IMG/VR virus record: IMGVR_UViG_3300009093_000034
Location: 124,001-188,000 of that record
Direction: 5' to 3' (one strand)
DNA: 64,000 nt
Made by a program: the position numbers and the translations under genes. The first letter of the stretch is position 1. The number at the start of each line of letters is the position of its first letter. A model generated the notes under the pieces. The model was not told where the DNA came from. It saw nothing but the letters and a program-made list of their open reading frames with translations, and did no database searches. This document shows positions 4,980 through 54,716 of the stretch, piece by piece.

Positions 4980-5089
4980 TAAACACGGGCCGAAAGGCGG
5001 TCAAGCTCAAGCGTGTCTAAAAATCTTGAGTAGCAGGTTGGCTATGCTTCGTAAGGAACCAACTAGGGCAGACGCCGAAAAGGTCGAAC

Positions 5090-8284: not shown

Positions 8285-9196
8285 ATGAGTGACACCTTAA
8301 CACTAGAGATCCTAGTCGGTGCCCCTGCTTCTGGTAAGTCCACTTACGCAGAAGAAAAACTAAAGACTGAGAAGAACTGGGTGAGGATCAACAAAGATAC
8401 CTTGAGAACCCAACTTCGTCAGGCCAAGAAAGATTTTACCGAGCGTGAGCTCAACAGTATTGAAGACATTCACATTGAGGCTGCGCTCAAAGCGGGATCA
8501 AGCGTGATCGTTGACGACACCAACTTGAATCCTTTCCATGTCAAAGATCGTCTACGACCTTTGGGACGGAAGTACGGAGCCAGAGTTCTTGTTAACACTG
8601 AGTTTCTTAAGGTTCCTGTGGAAGAACTGATTTCTCGAGACAAGAGACGAAAGAACTCTGTTGGTGCAGATGTCATCAACGACATGGTCGACAGGTTCTA
8701 TGCTACTTGGCTTAGGAACGCCACTCCTTGGTTGGATACAATCAAGGAAAACAAAGAGAAGACTCCTGTTTATCTCTTTGACTTGGACGGTACCTTGGCC
8801 TTCGCTACAGAGCGAGGTTGGTACGAGGACAAGTTGGCAGGAACGGACACTCCTAACATTCCTGTCATGGGAATCTTGAAGAGTCTTCTTCGCTCTGTGA
8901 GAGTCATCTTTGTTTCTGGTCGAGAAGATAAGTCTTGGCAAGTCACGTGGGATTGGCTCATTAAGCACAGTGAAGTAGGTTTTGACACGTGGGATTCTGG
9001 TCAACCTATGCTCTTGATGAGAAAGACGGGTGACGAGCGTTCTGATGACGTAGTCAAGGCTGAGATCTATAACGAGCAGATCAAGGACAACTTCAATGTT
9101 CTTGGGATCTTCGATGATCGACCTAAGGTCGTTCGAATGTGGAAGTCTCTTGGCTTGTTTGTGTTCGATTGTTACCAATCTGACCAAGAGTTCTAA
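8285..9196 (+). CDS. pseT: Polynucleotide 5'-kinase/3'-phosphatase (T4 PseT-like)
   Basis: P-loop GAPASGKST, RINKDTLR, HAD motif FDLDGT, FDDRPKVV. Confidence 0.93.
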   Translation: MSDTLTLEILVGAPASGKSTYAEEKLKTEKNWVRINKDTLRTQLRQAKKDFTERELNSIEDIHIEAALKAGSSVIVDDTNLNPFHVKDRLRPLGRKYGARVLVNTEFLKVPVEELISRDKRRKNSVGADVINDMVDRFYATWLRNATPWLDTIKENKEKTPVYLFDLDGTLAFATERGWYEDKLAGTDTPNIPVMGILKSLLRSVRVIFVSGREDKSWQVTWDWLIKHSEVGFDTWDSGQPMLLMRKTGDERSDDVVKAEIYNEQIKDNFNVLGIFDDRPKVVRMWKSLGLFVFDCYQSDQEF

Positions 9197-12903: not shown

Positions 12904-13923
12904 ATGGATATCAAGATCATCGGTTGTGGCGGAGCTTTCTCCGAAGACGGTTATTTATTTCACCAGTCTTTTTTGATCAGTGAAGGTGGAGAGAACCTTC
13001 TATTTGATATGGGCAAGGACGTTTGGCCTTGGGCTATGAAGAAGCAAGGCTTGGGTGTTAATGACATCCATCAGGTCTTGATCACTCACCGTCATGACGA
13101 TCACATCGGTTCATTGGGAACTTTTGGTCTCAAGAGATACAATTGGTTTGAGAAACCTATTCACTGGAAAGACTCAAAGAGAGATTACGCTCCTACCCTG
13201 ATTTACTCCATGGACCTTCAAGATGGTCTTTGGGAGTCTCTTAGAGGTAACCTTGAAACCAATGAAGGTTTCGTAGGTTCTTTGGAAACGTTCTTCAAGT
13301 TGAAGCCTATCAAGGAAAACGAGCACTGGGATTTCCACGGTTGGGATCTTCAATTGGTTCGCCAAGTCCATGTCATGGCCGGAAACTCTTTGATGAGTAC
13401 TCATGGTTTGTTCCTGGAGAAGGGTGATCACAGAATCTTCCTGACCGGTGACTGTCAGTTCTTCCAGCCCAAACAGGTTATCTGGTTCTACAACCGAGCT
13501 ACCTTCATCATCACAGACAACGAAACTGTAGGATCCAACTTCCTTTTCCAAGAAGGAACTGAAGTCTACGACGTAACCATCGATGGAAAGAAGGTTACCA
13601 AGCTTTGGCCTACTCTTCTTGAAGACCCTGATGGAATGAAGGTCATGGAACTAATGGCCCAGGATTTCACTCCCTACAAGTGGGAAGTCTTGAAATTCTC
13701 TTCAGGTGTTCACTCGACCTATCCTGAATTGGCAGGTTATCCTTCCGCCAATGCTACAAGGCTTGCTCCTGAGATCAAGAAAAAGATGCACCTTTCTCAC
13801 TATGGTGACCACGTTCCTCAGAACAAGGATGCCTTTGGCAATGATCTTGACTGGGAAGCTCAAGCTAAGAAAGACGGCTTTGCTGGATTCGTCAAGCCTG
13901 GACAGGTCTTTCATTTCGAGTAA
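12904..13923 (+). CDS. MBL-fold metallohydrolase, Apyc1-like cyclic-nucleotide phosphodiesterase (alternative: RNase Z-like)
   Basis: IGCGGAFS, ITHRHDDHIG (HxHxDH), TGDCQF, SGVH, HYGD. Confidence 0.8.
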   Translation: MDIKIIGCGGAFSEDGYLFHQSFLISEGGENLLFDMGKDVWPWAMKKQGLGVNDIHQVLITHRHDDHIGSLGTFGLKRYNWFEKPIHWKDSKRDYAPTLIYSMDLQDGLWESLRGNLETNEGFVGSLETFFKLKPIKENEHWDFHGWDLQLVRQVHVMAGNSLMSTHGLFLEKGDHRIFLTGDCQFFQPKQVIWFYNRATFIITDNETVGSNFLFQEGTEVYDVTIDGKKVTKLWPTLLEDPDGMKVMELMAQDFTPYKWEVLKFSSGVHSTYPELAGYPSANATRLAPEIKKKMHLSHYGDHVPQNKDAFGNDLDWEAQAKKDGFAGFVKPGQVFHFE

Positions 13924-20715: not shown

Positions 20716-20787
20716 AACAGGATAGTGTTTAACGGTAGCGCGGCGGCCTTCGGGACGAAAGTAGTGGTTCGAATCCACTTCCTGGGC
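20716..20787 (+). pseudogene. Degenerate tRNA-Pro(CGG)-like
   Basis: Intact T arm and D loop, 5-bp acceptor, broken anticodon stem around TT-CGG-GA. Confidence 0.5.
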
Positions 20788-20994
20788 AGAAAAGATAGTT
20801 CGGTTAACGGTGTTGGTCTTTACTACTGTCGGGATCCTCTCCCTTATGAGTGTAAAGAGCTGATCCGACCAGGCGAGCAGTGCGAGAAGGAAAAACAGGC
20901 GTTACAGAGATGGATGTGACGTCAATGCCTGATCATCGCGTCGCGTACTTGAGGGACAATAACCTGACAAAACCCTCAGGATCTACTTTTTCAC

Positions 20995-21631: not shown

Positions 21632-22273
21632 ATGATAGAGTATCCATCAATCATCAACAGCTCAAAAGCACCTCGTCAATCGATGATTGCGTTTGAGAAG
21701 TTGGACGGGAGTAACATCCGAGTCAAGTACACAGCTAAGAGAGGATTTGATCTCTTCGGAAGTCGAACTCAACTATTGGATGAAACTCATCCGATTCTTG
21801 GTGGTGTAGTCAAAGTCTTCAACGAGACCTGTAAGGAAGCGTTGGAAGAGTACTTCAGGAAGTACTACTCAAAGGAACGAGAGATCGAAGTCTTCGGAGA
21901 GTACGTCGGGCCTAACTCGTTTGCAGGCTTCCACTCGGATCCTGTTGACAAGATGAAGTTCGTGCTGTTTGACGTTATGATGATCCGTAAGGGTTATAAT
22001 GAGTTCTTGCTTCCGCAGGAGTTCATCAAGCTAGCGGAGCGTAACGCATCAGTTCCAGTCCCTAGAGTGATCTACGAAGGTAATCTTACCGACGATTTCA
22101 TCTCAAGAGTCCGTGCTGACGAGTTTGGAACATTCGAAGGTGTGGTCTGTAAGGGAAAGCAAGGACTCGGTTCTTTCCGAGGGAAAGTTTGGATGTGCAA
22201 GATCAAAACGAATGCATATCTAGAACTTCTCAAAGAAAAGAAAGGCGCAGACTGGGTTAAGTTTGCAGAGTAA
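21632..22273 (+). CDS. RNA ligase (Rnl2-like nucleotidyltransferase)
   Basis: Motif I EKLDGSNIR, FGE, FDV, EGVVCK, CKIK; RBS AAGGAG. Confidence 0.85.
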   Translation: MIEYPSIINSSKAPRQSMIAFEKLDGSNIRVKYTAKRGFDLFGSRTQLLDETHPILGGVVKVFNETCKEALEEYFRKYYSKEREIEVFGEYVGPNSFAGFHSDPVDKMKFVLFDVMMIRKGYNEFLLPQEFIKLAERNASVPVPRVIYEGNLTDDFISRVRADEFGTFEGVVCKGKQGLGSFRGKVWMCKIKTNAYLELLKEKKGADWVKFAE

Positions 22274-25228: not shown

Positions 25229-25569
25229 CTCCAAGGAGAAACTGCGTAGCCGTCATCCAGGTGATGATGGACATGATCCCAAAAGATCAAACTGAGTTTC
25301 TCAAGGCTCTTCAATGGAACCTTGAAGACGCAGCTTACAAACCTCCTGAAGAGACTCTTCAATGGGAACGAACTGCGTACACTCTTAGCAAGTACATACC
25401 AATCCCTGAACAAGATTGGGAGCTTCAGGTGGTGAGCATCTTTACCACTGAACCTGTCGAAGCTATCAAAGCTAAGGTAGCCGAGTTCTTGAAACTCCAA
25501 CAACAAGGTTGGAAAGAACTCGAAGATGACATCGGAGACAAAATTTCTGATGCAAAGTTACTATTGTAA
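25225..25569 (+). CDS. Hypothetical protein
   Basis: ATGA-coupled. Confidence 0.65.
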   Translation: MTPRRNCVAVIQVMMDMIPKDQTEFLKALQWNLEDAAYKPPEETLQWERTAYTLSKYIPIPEQDWELQVVSIFTTEPVEAIKAKVAEFLKLQQQGWKELEDDIGDKISDAKLLL

Positions 25570-28216: not shown

Positions 28217-28314
28217 AGGCGTCTTCTGGACTGATTGGAAACGGGTTCGATTCCCGTTGCGCCTAAAAACTTTCCCTCACTCGTACGAGATGAGGCGACC
28301 TCAATTTAAGGAGG
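28217..28314 (+). ncRNA. tRNA/Y-RNA-like element in the TROVE leader
   Basis: Perfect T arm 28241-28257; CGCCT can pair with 28218 or 28293 AGGCG; CCTC/GAGG hairpin covers the RBS. Confidence 0.45.
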
Positions 28315-28320
28315 TTGTCT

Positions 28321-29889
28321 ATGTCTAGAATGGCAAACAACCCCAAGGCTGCTACTGCAGCTAAGACCATGAGGAACATTCCTCAGGCAGATACTTTCAA
28401 CAAGGCAGGAGGACGAGCATATTCCAAGTCGGCTAAGGTCGAGCTTGCGGATCTCTTGTTCTCAAACTTCTTGTCCGGAGACACTTACCGAAAGGAAAGT
28501 GAAGTCTCCAAGAGGATCGAGGAGCTTGCTTCTCAGATCGAAGACAAGGAGTTCTTGGCCAAGGCCGCTCTTTACACTCGTAATGAGCTTGGCATGAGGA
28601 CCATGAGCCATCTGTTGGCAGGTGAGATCGCTTCCAAGAACTACGCTTCTGGCTCCGGCTGGGGACGTACCTTCTTCGATGCAATCGTCTACCGTGTCGA
28701 CGACATGGCTGAGATCCTTGGTTACTTCCTCGGAAAGGACCACAAAGCAATCCCTAACTCCCTAAAGTCTGGCTTCTCGTAAGCCTTCGATCGTTTCGAC
28801 GCCTACCAGTTGGCCAAGTATCGTGGTGACAGCAACGCTGTAAAGCTTGTTGACATTGTTCGACTTGTCCACCCGAAGGGAAACGAAAAGAACAAGACTG
28901 CTCTTGAGCAACTTGTTAAGGGAACCCTAAGAAACACCAAGACTTGGGAGGCTAAGGTCTCCGCAGCAGGTCAGAAGGCAACTTCCAAGGAAGCTGTCGC
29001 TGCTACCGCTGAGGCTTGGGAAGACCTTCTTAAGGAGAACAAGCTTGGTTACCTTGCTTTGATTCGTAACTTGACGAACATCGCCAACTCTGTTGATGAT
29101 GCTACGTTTGAGACGGCTCTGGCTCAGGTGATCGATGAGAAGTCTGTAAAGACCTCTCTAGTTCTTCCTTTCCAACTCTACATCGCTGCAAAGCAAGTAG
29201 AGAACGAGGGAAGGATCAAGAATCACAGCAGAATGTCAAAGGTGATCGACGCGCTGACCGCAGCCATCGACGTTTCTTTGTCCAACGTTCCTAAGCTCGA
29301 GGGCAAGACTCTCGTTGCAGTGGACATCTCTGGATCAATGGACTCTCGTCTATCAGCCATGGGTCAAGCTCGTGTTGTTGACGTAGCAACTCTCTTCGGT
29401 GTTGTCTTGGCTAAGGCTAACGATGCTGATTTGGTTCGCTTCAACACCAGTGCTTCCTACTCTGTTGTTCCTAAGTCTAGGTCTACTCTTGACTCTGTCA
29501 AGAGCTTGGCACAGACCGGTGGTGGTACTGCCTTCGAGTCCATCATGTACTTGATCAACCAGTCACAGACTGTCTACGATAGGATCTTGGTTCTATCTGA
29601 CATGCAGTCTTGGTCAGGAAAGACCGGAGGAGACTTCGCTCGCCTTGTCCAAGAGTACAGAAACAACAAGAAGCGTCCTAACATGACCTTCCTTTCGTGG
29701 GACCTCCACGGAGGAACCTCTCACCAGGTTCCTGAGTCTGATCCTCGTTCCATCGTCCTAGGAGGATGGAGTGACAAGATCTTCGACATCTTGGCAGAGA
29801 CCGAGACCGATCGAAACGCTCTAGTGAAGACCATCGAAGAGTACGAGATCAAGGTTCCTACCAAGGAACGAGCTCGTAAGACTGCGTAA
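28321..29889 (+). CDS. rsr: Ro60/TROVE-vWA RNA-binding protein interrupted by one in-frame TAA (28780-28782)
   Basis: NKAGGRAY, YTRNELGMRT, *AFDRFDAYQLAKYR continues in frame, LVHPK, TWE, ALIRNL, vWA VDISGSM and GGT..SDMQ. Confidence 0.88.
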
Positions 29890-30665: not shown

Positions 30666-31067
30666 ATGGAACCTTTTACTGACTCAGTAATCAAATATGT
30701 AGTGTATCACGGGTCTACTGATTCAATAAAAAAGTTTGATTCTACGTTCCCAGATCAAGCATTTCCTGCTCTTTATTTTTCTAGAACATTCGAAAAAGCT
30801 GAAGAATATACTCGTTCAGCTAAGAATCAATTAAAGTCTCATAAGACATTACCTCATTATGTCTATGCTTGTTTCATAGATATGAGAGAACCTCTTGAGC
30901 TTCCATCAAGACAAACGTATTTTATTGATCAAAAAAGAGTAGACCTTATTACAAGTCTTGGATTTGATGGGCTTATTGGGAAAGATGAAAAAAATGAAAT
31001 TGAAGAATTTGTTTTGTTCGATCCCTCAAAAGTAAAAATTCTAAATAGAACATTAATAAAAGGTTAA
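30666..31067 (+). CDS. ADP-ribosyltransferase-fold protein (PolyVal-ART-like)
   Basis: VYHGS..F..ALYFS..AEEY..GFDGLI..EFVLFDPSKVKI; AT-rich codons. Confidence 0.6.
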   Translation: MEPFTDSVIKYVVYHGSTDSIKKFDSTFPDQAFPALYFSRTFEKAEEYTRSAKNQLKSHKTLPHYVYACFIDMREPLELPSRQTYFIDQKRVDLITSLGFDGLIGKDEKNEIEEFVLFDPSKVKILNRTLIKG

Positions 31068-31936: not shown

Positions 31937-32881
31937 ATGCGTAAAGACGTCCTCTTGTCTCGCGACGCCTTCCGCAAGGCTGTCTTTGATCGAGACCACA
32001 ACACATGCGTATTCTGTTCTCTTCCTGCAGTAGATGCTCACCACATCATGGAGCGAAAGCTCTGGCCTGATGGTGGCTACTATTTGAACAATGGTGCCTC
32101 CGTCTGCGAACAGCATCACTGGGATTGTGAGAACTCCATCATCTCTGTTGAACAAGTCAGAAAGGCTTGTAACATCATCGACATCATTCTTCCTCCTTAC
32201 TTTTCTGAGAATCAAATCTACGATAAGTGGGGAAATCAGAAGCTCACGACTGAAGAAGCCGGAGCTATCAAGTACCCTAGAACTTATCACTTCCCTTGGT
32301 CCCAAAATCTCATCAACGACGATCGAATGTTGGAGTCTACTTCTCAGTTCGAACTCAACCACGTGATCGCTACGGTCAAGATGGATGGTGAAAACACGAC
32401 CATGACTAGAGATGCTTGTCACGCAAGGTCTCTTGATAGTGGAGCTCATCCTTCTAGAACTTGGGTCAGATCTTTTTGGGGTTCTCTCAAACACAACATT
32501 CCAGAAGGTTGGAGAGTTTGTGGAGAAAATCTTTACGCAAAACACTCAATCCTTTATACTGATCTCACCAGCTATTTCCAAGGCTTATCAATCTGGAATG
32601 ACAAGAACATTTGTCTGTCCTGGAAAGAGACCAAAGAATGGTTTGAACTTCTTGGCATTCAACCTGTCCAAGAGATCTACGATGGCATGTACTACGAAAA
32701 AGGCATCAAGGATCTTTGGGACCCAACAAAAGGTTGGGAAGGCTACGTAGTTCGGTTCGCAGAGGAATTTCCTATGAGAGATTTCAATCTCAAGGTAGGA
32801 AAGTTTGTTAGAAAAGGCCATGTTCAAACTGATGAACATTGGATGCAACAAGCTCTGACACCTAATAAACTCCAGGCCTAA
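31937..32881 (+). CDS. HNH endonuclease-RNA ligase fusion
   Basis: N-term CVFC..DAHHI..LCxxHH; C-term KYPRTYHFPWS, VKMDGENTT, CGENLY, EGYVVR, KFVR. Confidence 0.85.
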   Translation: MRKDVLLSRDAFRKAVFDRDHNTCVFCSLPAVDAHHIMERKLWPDGGYYLNNGASVCEQHHWDCENSIISVEQVRKACNIIDIILPPYFSENQIYDKWGNQKLTTEEAGAIKYPRTYHFPWSQNLINDDRMLESTSQFELNHVIATVKMDGENTTMTRDACHARSLDSGAHPSRTWVRSFWGSLKHNIPEGWRVCGENLYAKHSILYTDLTSYFQGLSIWNDKNICLSWKETKEWFELLGIQPVQEIYDGMYYEKGIKDLWDPTKGWEGYVVRFAEEFPMRDFNLKVGKFVRKGHVQTDEHWMQQALTPNKLQA

Positions 32882-54338: not shown

Positions 54339-54716
54339 ATGGATGCACTAATCGCTGAACAGAAAACCAGATTTAGAACTCTAAAGATCTGGAAAGAATT
54401 TAGACAACATCTGATTGAGGTCAGAGGTCCTAGTTGTGAGTGTTGTGGAACAACCTACTCAGGTAAAAGAAAAAAGCAACTCCAGATCCACCATTTGTAC
54501 CCATCTCAGTACGAACTTCTTGAGGAGTTCAGATTCAAGATTCTTTGTAGCAGATGTCACGACGCTGTTGAAACAATTAACATAAAACTCAAATCTAAGA
54601 ACCAAACGTTGATCAGAAGAGATTTATTTCTTGCTCTATATGGTGAATTTCTTCCACGCGAAGAGCCCTTAAGATCTAAGTATAACCTTGAACAGTTCGA
54701 AAAGGATCAAAATTAA
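54339..54716 (+). CDS. HNH endonuclease
   Basis: CECCG..QIHHL..LCSRCH. Confidence 0.8.
   Translation: MDALIAEQKTRFRTLKIWKEFRQHLIEVRGPSCECCGTTYSGKRKKQLQIHHLYPSQYELLEEFRFKILCSRCHDAVETINIKLKSKNQTLIRRDLFLALYGEFLPREEPLRSKYNLEQFEKDQN

What the first reader, a model, noticed from the sequence alone, without database searches (positions are those of the whole stretch)
28321..29889. Ro60/TROVE gene broken by a single in-frame TAA in a conserved block
Reading TCG-TAA-GCC-TTC-GAT-CGT gives SGFS*AFDRFDAYQLAKY; both halves are in one frame and otherwise intact. Options are recent inactivation, ochre readthrough, a split protein, or a sequence error (a compensating indel pair giving e.g. GLRKAF would remove the stop). 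The suppressor tRNA in this window reads UAG, not UAA, so it does not explain the stop.
Basis: seen in the sequence. Interest (0 to 1): 0.7.

Follow-up and report, generated by a model that had tools for sequence, protein, structure and literature searches.

The report
Ro60 stop private to one assembly
The stop codon that splits this jumbo-phage Ro60 gene comes from a single C-to-A difference found only in this one assembled record; every other assembly and run of the same phage reads serine there, so the gene is almost certainly intact and the finding is ordinary.

Summary
An in-frame TAA at window 28780-28782 splits a Ro60/TROVE-vWA gene (28321-29889, + strand) into 153 and 368 codons.

The stop does not belong to the phage. 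The window is part of a 305,833-bp circular MEGAHIT contig (JGI 3300009093), a jumbo phage with 50 tRNAs. Base 28781 is C, giving TCA (Ser), in all five other sources:
- an ENA re-assembly (305,853 bp)
- a JGI 3300025913 contig
- the Logan contigs of the run flagged as the probable source (k-mer depth 12)
- a second sample
- a relative about 96% identical

No listed run holds the sampled 31-mers that contain the A (only two words were sampled, so this is weak).

Over about 86 kb compared, the record differs from its sisters at four sites. All four are C to A on the same strand.

All 24 aligned relatives read through this column, which holds S, E, K, Q, N, T or L. The intact 522-aa protein aligns end to end with the solved Ro60 of Thermus phage phiLo.

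The genome has no UUA-anticodon tRNA, and TAA is its main terminator (71%).

Verdict: an assembly or consensus artefact, or at most a rare variant. It is not readthrough, not a split protein and not an indel pair. Low interest.

The parts
28321..29889 (+). Ro60/Rsr-type gene (TROVE HEAT-repeat ring plus vWA domain with a MIDAS motif). It encodes 522 aa when codon 154 is read as in the sister assemblies.
   Evidence: Pfam on the intact sister protein P0122: TROVE 79 bits (cut-off 23) and vWA_Ro60 31.3 bits (cut-off 27.7). It is colinear over residues 25-497 with PDB 9KOP/9L5Y, E 3e-25. The MIDAS residues D335, S337, S339, T403 and D427 are invariant in 25 sequences.
28780..28782 (+). In-frame TAA. 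Base 28781 is A in this record and C (TCA, Ser154) everywhere else.
   Evidence: L003 (ENA re-assembly) and L002 (JGI 3300025913) have C. Logan contigs of X1 (depth 12.3), X2 and X3 have C. No run was listed for the 61-nt stretch in which every 31-mer contains the A (only 2 sampled words, so this is weak).
28308..28314 (+). Shine-Dalgarno AAGGAGG, 6 nt before the ATG at 28321. It is the only ribosome-binding site serving the gene; none precedes the first start codon after the stop (TTG 28810).
   Evidence: Read directly. AAGGAGG is conserved in the two closest viral relatives.
28275..28295 (+). Small hairpin between the tRNA-like element and the ribosome-binding site. A C-rich/G-rich hairpin sits at the same place in L012 and L013.
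   Evidence: Fold and alignment. Its function was not tested.
28218..28263 (+). tRNA-like element (short acceptor-like stem plus a perfect T-arm, GGGTTCGATTCCC). It ends 57 nt before the Ro60 ATG. It is either a decayed tRNA or a possible Y-RNA-like partner.
   Evidence: Weak Rfam matches only: tmRNA T-arm 15.2 bits and mascRNA 14.9 bits. ARAGORN does not call it. In relative L013 a true tRNA-Arg(GCG) ends at the same offset. It has no GNCGAAN0-1G motif.
32587..32587 (+). Second private C-to-A difference of this record. It changes TTC to TTA (Phe to Leu) in the RNA ligase gene 31937-32881.
   Evidence: L002 and L003 have C. X1 and X3 have C. Codon; Pfam RNA_ligase.
5081..5081 (+). Third private C-to-A difference. 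It is intergenic, between tRNA-Tyr and tRNA-His.
   Evidence: L005 has C. X1 and X2 have C.
54343..54343 (+). Fourth private C-to-A difference. It changes GCT to GAT in codon 2 of a doubtful 125-aa ORF.
   Evidence: L007 has C. Codon.

Best explanation
The TAA is not a feature of the phage. It comes from one base, A instead of C at 28781, that exists only in this assembled record: JGI 3300009093, contig Ga0105240_10000031, a MEGAHIT assembly with k=123. The phage's real codon is TCA (Ser154). The gene encodes an ordinary intact 522-aa Ro60/Rsr protein, made of a TROVE ring and a vWA/MIDAS domain, translated from the single ribosome-binding site at 28308-28314.

The A is most likely a consensus or assembler error. 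Less likely, it is a low-frequency allele that this one assembler happened to follow. It is one of four C-to-A discrepancies that this record alone carries.

By homology (inferred, not shown), the protein binds structured or misfolded small RNAs. It sits in the phage's tRNA and RNA-repair island.
For: 1. Same phage, other assemblies. L003 (ENA ERZ27252312, a 305,853-bp contig) is identical to the window over 20,013 bp except at 28781 and 32587, both C where the window has A. L002 (JGI 3300025913) also has C at both sites. Both call one 522-aa protein with Ser at residue 154.

2. Sequencing runs. The Logan contig of X1 spans the whole stretch at depth 12.3 and has C at 28781, 32587 and 5081. 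X1 was flagged as the possible source and holds 99% of the sampled words. X2, another sample, has C at 28781 and 5081. X3, a relative about 96% identical, has C at 28781 and 32587, so C is the ancestral base.

3. A 61-nt query in which every 31-mer contains the A found no run. Only 2 words were sampled, so this is weak.

4. Across about 85.8 kb compared with sister contigs there are only 4 private differences. All four are C to A on the + strand: one nonsense, two missense, one intergenic, none synonymous. Natural divergence in X3 is mostly transitions.

5. All 24 aligned relatives are uninterrupted. The column holds E, S, K, Q, N, T or L and lies between invariant G151 and A155. LR745206 reads GFAKAF.

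6. The intact protein aligns in one stretch (residues 25-497) with the solved phage Ro60 9KOP/9L5Y.

7. The 123-bp exact terminal overlap identifies the record as a MEGAHIT k123 circular contig.
Against: Raw reads could not be inspected. The runs are held only as Logan contigs, which drop rare variants, so a minority A allele in the sample cannot be excluded.

It is inferred, not shown, that X1, the ENA assembly and JGI 3300025913 derive from the same sample as the window's record. The inference rests on zero other differences in about 86 kb and on matching Logan contig lengths.

I cannot explain why an assembler at roughly 12x k-mer depth would write an unsupported base four times. All four differences lie within one 49-kb span, with none in the next 39 kb. 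That would also fit a linked minor haplotype.
Confidence: 0.87

Rival explanations
1. A real, recent nonsense allele. A sub-lineage of the phage in this rhizosphere sample carries TAA, plus three other G:C-to-T:A changes, for example after oxidative damage or growth in a MutY/MutM-deficient host. The JGI assembler followed that haplotype, so in that sub-lineage Ro60 is inactivated.
For: The four private differences lie in one 49-kb span, with none in the next 39 kb. The population has some polymorphism: a SPAdes contig end carries T against A at 63710. Assemblers rarely invent bases. Logan contigs hide minor alleles (note in the tool output).
Against: Three other assemblies and contig sets, all indistinguishable elsewhere from the window's population, chose C at every tested site and never A. 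No listed run holds the sampled 31-mers containing the A (only 2 words sampled). Four out of four changes of one transversion type on one strand is unlike the transition-rich natural spectrum seen in X3.
Confidence: 0.1
2. Programmed ochre readthrough or recoding. UAA is decoded as an amino acid, by a suppressor tRNA or by context, so the record is right and a full-length protein is still made.
For: The phage carries 50 tRNAs, including a CUA (amber) suppressor-type tRNA. The reading frame is perfectly open on both sides of the stop.
Against: ARAGORN finds no tRNA with anticodon UUA in the 305.8-kb genome. The two odd tRNAs with 6-nt anticodon loops have no UUA either. TAA ends 180 of 252 coding-like ORFs, and TAAG alone ends 52, so it is the normal terminator here. 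The stop is absent from sister copies of the same phage, so nothing has been conserved to read through.
Confidence: 0.01
3. A functional split Ro60: two polypeptides of 153 aa and about 359 aa that assemble into the ring.
For: JGI called two ORFs, of 150 and 359 aa.
Against: No ribosome-binding site or ATG follows the stop. The first start codon is TTG at 28810, with no purine-rich tract before it. The break lies inside the TROVE HEAT-repeat ring, next to invariant residues. None of the 24 aligned relatives is split, and none of the best 120 database hits or the 80 kept viral loci shows a split. Sister copies of the same phage are unsplit.
Confidence: 0.01
4. A compensating indel pair, the reader's proposed sub-form of a sequence error, which would remove the stop by a local frame change.
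Against: The alignment of the window with L003 over 20,013 bp has no gaps and two substitutions.
Confidence: 0

Closest known systems
phiRo60 of Thermus phage phiLo (PDB 9KOP crystal structure, 9L5Y cryo-EM with Yrl2; Nucleic Acids Res 2025, PMC12135203)
   Same: It is a phage-encoded Ro60 homologue with a TROVE ring and a vWA domain. It aligns with the intact protein over residues 25-497, E 3.3e-25. Both genes have non-coding RNA-like sequence directly upstream.
   Different: The match is distant, with about 77% of aligned positions at confident posterior. phiLo's Yrl1 and Yrl2 were found through CGAA motifs upstream of the gene. No such motif lies in the 120 nt upstream here. Binding to RNA or to host PNPase is untested here.
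Bacterial Rsr (Ro sixty-related) with YrlA/Y RNAs (Deinococcus radiodurans Rsr, PDB 2NVO; Chen et al. 2014, PMC4201824)
   Same: It has the same two-domain architecture (E 6e-8 to 2NVO). Y RNAs are typically encoded within 4 kb on the same strand and carry a tRNA-like domain. Here a T-arm-bearing tRNA-like element ends 57 nt upstream on the same strand.
   Different: The element lacks the GNCGAAN0-1G motif and a long Ro-binding stem. It has no Rfam match above threshold. It may simply be a decayed tRNA.
Ro60 genes of other large phages (uncultured phage LR745206, 634,780 bp; Vibrio, Caulobacter, Xanthomonas, Streptomyces and mycobacteriophages)
   Same: 230 phage records and 370 IMG/VR stretches encode relatives. 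The closest metagenomic relatives are 49-55% identical to the full-length protein, have similar length (511-540 aa) and are often flanked by tRNA genes.
   Different: None of those examined is interrupted. This record is the only one with a stop.
Assembly consensus mismatches in low-coverage metagenome contigs
   Same: These are isolated single-base discrepancies, at about 5 per 100 kb, private to one assembler's output and absent from re-assemblies.
   Different: All four are the same change (C to A) on the same strand of the record. That is unusual and unexplained.

Membership tests
Ro60 / Rsr (TROVE + vWA) proteins | TROVE domain above Pfam's gathering score | tested here: met
   PF05731 scores 79 bits against a cut-off of 23 on the intact sister protein P0122. 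The window's C-terminal part alone scores 53.8 bits.
Ro60 / Rsr (TROVE + vWA) proteins | C-terminal Ro60-type vWA domain with MIDAS residues (DxSxS ... T ... D) | tested here: met
   PF25045 scores 31.3 bits against a cut-off of 27.7. D335, S337, S339, T403 and D427 are invariant in 25 sequences.
Ro60 / Rsr (TROVE + vWA) proteins | One continuous polypeptide colinear with solved Ro60 structures | tested here: met
   Met for the sister copies of the gene: one alignment stretch, residues 25-497, against 9KOP/9L5Y, plus partial matches to 9NEN, 2NVO and 1YVP. In the window's own record the frame is cut at codon 154.
Ro60 / Rsr (TROVE + vWA) proteins | A partner Y RNA (YrlA-like: GNCGAAN0-1G motif, tRNA-like domain, same strand, within 4 kb) | tested here: inconclusive
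   A tRNA-like T-arm element lies at 28218-28263 on the same strand, but it has no motif. No Rfam family reaches threshold. The motif occurs only inside ORFs, at 25456, 25783, 27811 and 31313.
Ro60 / Rsr (TROVE + vWA) proteins | Binds Y RNA or misfolded RNA and recruits an exoribonuclease | not testable with these tools
   This needs biochemistry (EMSA, pull-down).
Programmed stop-codon readthrough or suppression | A cognate suppressor tRNA (anticodon UUA) or a reassigned code | tested here: not met
   The genome has 50 tRNAs and none has UUA. TAA ends 71% of coding-like ORFs.
Programmed stop-codon readthrough or suppression | The stop is conserved in copies of the same or related genomes | tested here: not met
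   All sister assemblies and runs have TCA. All 24 aligned relatives have sense codons.
Pseudogene (recent inactivation) | The disabling change is reproducible in independent sequence data of the same population | tested here: not met
   It is absent from the ENA re-assembly, the JGI 3300025913 contig and the Logan contigs of X1 and X2. No listed run holds the sampled A-containing 31-mers (only 2 words). Raw reads were not available.

The most novel reading that the evidence does not exclude
The TAA and its three companion C-to-A changes could be a real linked haplotype: a minor sub-lineage of this rhizosphere jumbo phage carrying a pure G:C-to-T:A mutation signature, from oxidative damage or a MutY/MutM-type mutator host. 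One of those hits has just knocked out Ro60. That would be a natural loss-of-function allele showing that Ro60 is dispensable in the short term.
Probability: 0.1. Interest if true: 0.25.

Novelty: not a real feature. Interest (0 to 1): 0.07.

Why it matters
This matters mainly for data quality. The public contig and its gene calls show a split Ro60 (150 + 359 aa), which would be read as a pseudogene or as a recoding event. The phage actually has an intact 522-aa gene. Anyone who uses this record to argue for ochre suppression, for stop-codon recoding in tRNA-rich jumbo phages, or for decay of phage Ro60 would be misled.

The intact gene is a normal member of a widespread class, phage-encoded Ro60 next to tRNA and RNA-repair genes. 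It adds one more example and no new principle.

Tried and rejected
- **Megablast of the locus against GenBank phages:** no match.
- **The search for related loci with the single protein in IMG/VR:** nothing. It worked only with the alignment.
- **Exact-pattern scans with M (A or C) at the site:** Metagenome contigs returned only the window's own contig, and viral contigs returned nothing. This gave no extra samples.
- **Literature search for the sample and contig identifiers:** no paper found.
- **Genome-wide screen for same-frame ORF pairs separated by one stop**: uninformative, because adjacent genes in the same frame swamp it. The crude test of ORF totals under re-assigned stops was uninformative too.
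- **Rfam searches for a Y RNA** at gathering and at permissive thresholds, in the window and in 20 related loci: only tRNAs and sub-threshold T-arm matches.
- **ARAGORN with relaxed, mitochondrial and intron modes on the upstream element:** no credible tRNA.
- **Fold of the upstream 117 nt:** not more stable than shuffles, z = -0.79.
- I included the stop codon in a minus-strand reference.
- **ENA contig DNA:** it could be fetched only once. Later look-ups returned 'file too large', so the genome-wide comparison rests mostly on the JGI 3300025913 contigs.
- **Coverage:** the part of the genome left of window position 2904 could not be compared with any sister assembly.

Full report
**1. The observation**

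The window reads TCG TAA GCC TTC GAT CGT, with TAA at 28780-28782. This is in the frame that starts at ATG 28321, six bases after an AAGGAGG, and ends at TAA 29887-29889. The stop leaves 153 codons before it and 368 after it, with no other interruption. The downstream part alone matches Pfam TROVE and vWA_Ro60.

**2. What the record is**

The window is bases 124,001-188,000 of a single 305,833-bp contig. The contig has 43.7% G+C and 50 tRNA genes. Its first and last 123 bases are identical. That is the signature of a circular contig written by MEGAHIT at k = 123 (my knowledge of the assembler).

Exact look-ups identify it as JGI metagenome 3300009093, contig Ga0105240_10000031. Loci fetched from that record are letter-for-letter the window. 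The stop is therefore in the public record and was not introduced later. JGI's gene calls on it are two pieces, of 150 and 359 aa.

It is a rhizosphere jumbo phage. Its closest GenBank relative for this gene is the 634,780-bp uncultured phage LR745206, at 43.5% identity.

**3. The same phage in other data**

The 90%-identity protein cluster of the gene holds two full-length 522-aa members besides the two JGI fragments.

- One lies on a 305,853-bp contig of ENA assembly ERZ27252312 (L003). L003 aligns with the window over 20,013 bp without gaps and with two mismatches, at window 28781 and 32587. Both are C in L003 and A in the window.
- The other lies on a 41,878-bp contig of JGI 3300025913 (L002), which has C at the same two places.

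With C the codon is TCA, so the peptide is SGFSSAFDRFD.

**4. Sequencing runs**

Six runs hold the region.

- X1 is a 2017 rhizosphere metagenome, flagged by the tool as the possible source. It holds 99% of the sampled words and covers the whole 5.5-kb stretch with one Logan contig at word depth 12.3. It has C at 28781 and at 32587.
- X2 is another sample at lower depth. It has C at 28781.
- X3 is a soil relative about 96% identical. It has C at both sites, so C is the ancestral state.

A query of 61 bases, chosen so that every 31-mer contains the A, found no run. Only two sampled words were available, so this is weak support.

These runs are held only as contigs, which drop rare variants. They show what the majority sequence is, not that an A allele is wholly absent.

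**5. The record's other private differences**

I compared about 85.8 kb of the genome with JGI 3300025913 contigs and the ENA contig (L003, L005, L007, L010, L092, L095). The window's record differs from its sisters at four sites only.

| Window position | Change in this record | Effect |
|---|---|---|
| 5081 | C to A | intergenic |
| 28781 | TCA to TAA | nonsense in Ro60 |
| 32587 | TTC to TTA | Phe to Leu in an RNA ligase gene |
| 54343 | GCT to GAT | codon 2 of a doubtful ORF |

X1 and X2 also have C at 5081.

All four are C to A on the + strand of the record, and none is synonymous. Natural divergence, as seen in X3, is mostly transitions.

A fifth difference, T against A at 63710, belongs to the last 42 bases of a SPAdes contig. 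Another contig of the same assembly contradicts it.

Identity at every other position argues that these assemblies sample the same population, probably the same reads. That link is an inference.

I cannot say why the assembler wrote A four times. The same change on the same strand hints at a computational rather than a chemical cause, but with four events this is only a hint.

**6. Is a stop at this position plausible biology?**

It is not.

- All 24 relatives aligned, at 41-55% identity, are uninterrupted. The column is variable (E, S, K, Q, N, T, L, with Ser in eight of them) and is flanked by invariant G151, A155, F159 and D160.
- The intact protein aligns in one stretch, residues 25-497, with the solved Ro60 of Thermus phage phiLo (9KOP/9L5Y, E 3.3e-25). 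It aligns partly with human, Deinococcus and Xenopus Ro60 (the identity of the entries comes from PMC12135203).
- The break would fall inside the HEAT-repeat ring.
- After the stop there is no ribosome-binding site. The first start codon is a TTG at 28810.
- The genome has no tRNA with anticodon UUA. Its two tRNAs with six-base anticodon loops do not contain UUA, and its suppressor-type tRNA is CUA.
- TAA ends 180 of 252 coding-like ORFs, and TAAG ends 52 of them. It is the phage's ordinary terminator.

**7. What the gene is and how it probably works**

The gene is a phage Ro60/Rsr orthologue. TROVE scores 79 bits and vWA_Ro60 31 bits, and the MIDAS residues are intact. Such genes are common in phages: 230 GenBank phage records and 370 IMG/VR stretches carry one.

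By homology, and therefore inferred, the ring binds structured or misfolded small RNAs. In phiLo it binds phage Y-like RNAs and recruits host PNPase.

Here the gene sits in a tRNA and RNA-repair island (Pfam marks):
- 20 tRNA genes in the window
- two PF09414 RNA ligases
- a PNKP-like kinase/phosphatase
- PTH2
- an Rv2179c-like exoribonuclease
- a CCA-adding enzyme

Directly upstream lies a tRNA-like element, 28218-28263, with a perfect T-arm, followed by a small hairpin. In relative L013 a true tRNA-Arg ends at the same 57-nt offset. The element lacks the GNCGAAN0-1G motif that marks YrlA RNAs and matches no Rfam family. I therefore regard it as a decayed tRNA or, less likely, an unrecognised Y-like RNA.

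**8. Verdict**

The stop codon is private to one assembly and is contradicted by every other source, so the finding is not a real feature of the phage (confidence about 0.87). The main residual alternative, at about 0.1, is a rare real haplotype. Readthrough, a split protein and an indel pair are each at or below 0.01. Raw-read pile-ups at the four sites would settle the matter. Interest is low.

Noticed in passing
window 28515-28538 (compared with L002:3189-3219): The JGI 3300025913 contig replaces 24 bases inside the Ro60 gene with the exact reverse complement of window 28428-28458. This turns an imperfect inverted repeat into a perfect one, in frame (IEELASQI becomes SASSTLAD). It is private to that assembly, since L003, X1 and the window agree. 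It is either a quasi-palindrome template-switch event or a SPAdes artefact. It shows that each assembly has its own quirks.
   Followed up: partly
window 5081, 28781, 32587, 54343: All four private differences of this record are C to A on the same strand, with none in the following 39 kb. The cause is unknown: an assembler or encoding artefact, an oxidative-damage signature, or a linked minor haplotype.
   Followed up: partly
window 35775-35849: A well-formed tRNA with anticodon CUA (amber suppressor type; Rfam tRNA 68.6 bits; ARAGORN labels it Pyl). In this genome TAG is the rarest terminator, ending 15 of 252 ORFs. I did not test whether any phage gene carries an in-frame TAG.
   Followed up: no
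T-loops at window 6144, 16305, 20767, 21048, 22728 and 28245: Six intergenic elements have canonical T-arms (GGTTCGAnTCC type) that neither ARAGORN nor Rfam calls as tRNAs. The one at about 20720-20790 also contains GACGAAAG, which fits the YrlA motif GNCGAAN0-1G. They may be odd tRNAs, tRNA remnants or Y-RNA-like genes.
   Followed up: partly
genome 89383-89456 and 115277-115352 (outside the window): Two tRNA-shaped genes have six-base anticodon loops, so ARAGORN cannot assign an anticodon.
   Followed up: partly
window 8285-9196, 21632-22273, 31937-32881, 35367-35741, 37951-38541, 39354-40742: An RNA-repair and tRNA-maintenance gene set surrounds Ro60: a PNKP-like kinase/phosphatase, two PF09414 RNA ligases, PTH2, an Rv2179c-like exoribonuclease and a CCA-adding enzyme with an HD domain (Pfam marks).
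   Followed up: partly
window 12904-13923: A metallo-beta-lactamase-fold protein matches Pfam Anti-Pycsar_Apyc1, a candidate counter-defence nuclease for cyclic nucleotides.
   Followed up: no
window 30666-31067; genome about 114,240-114,830 (L011:1483-2067): There are two ADP-ribosyltransferase-type genes: ART-PolyVal just downstream of Ro60, and an ADPrib_exo_Tox-domain gene upstream of the window. Their start codons are called differently in the different assemblies.
   Followed up: no
genome 1-123 and 305711-305833: An exact 123-bp terminal overlap shows that the contig is a closed circle as assembled. The ENA contig of the same phage starts at a different point (window 19877) and in the opposite orientation.
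   Followed up: yes
window 63710 (L010 position 42): T in one 3300025913 contig end against A in the window and in another contig of the same assembly. It is a polymorphism or tip error at the place where the SPAdes graph broke.
   Followed up: partly
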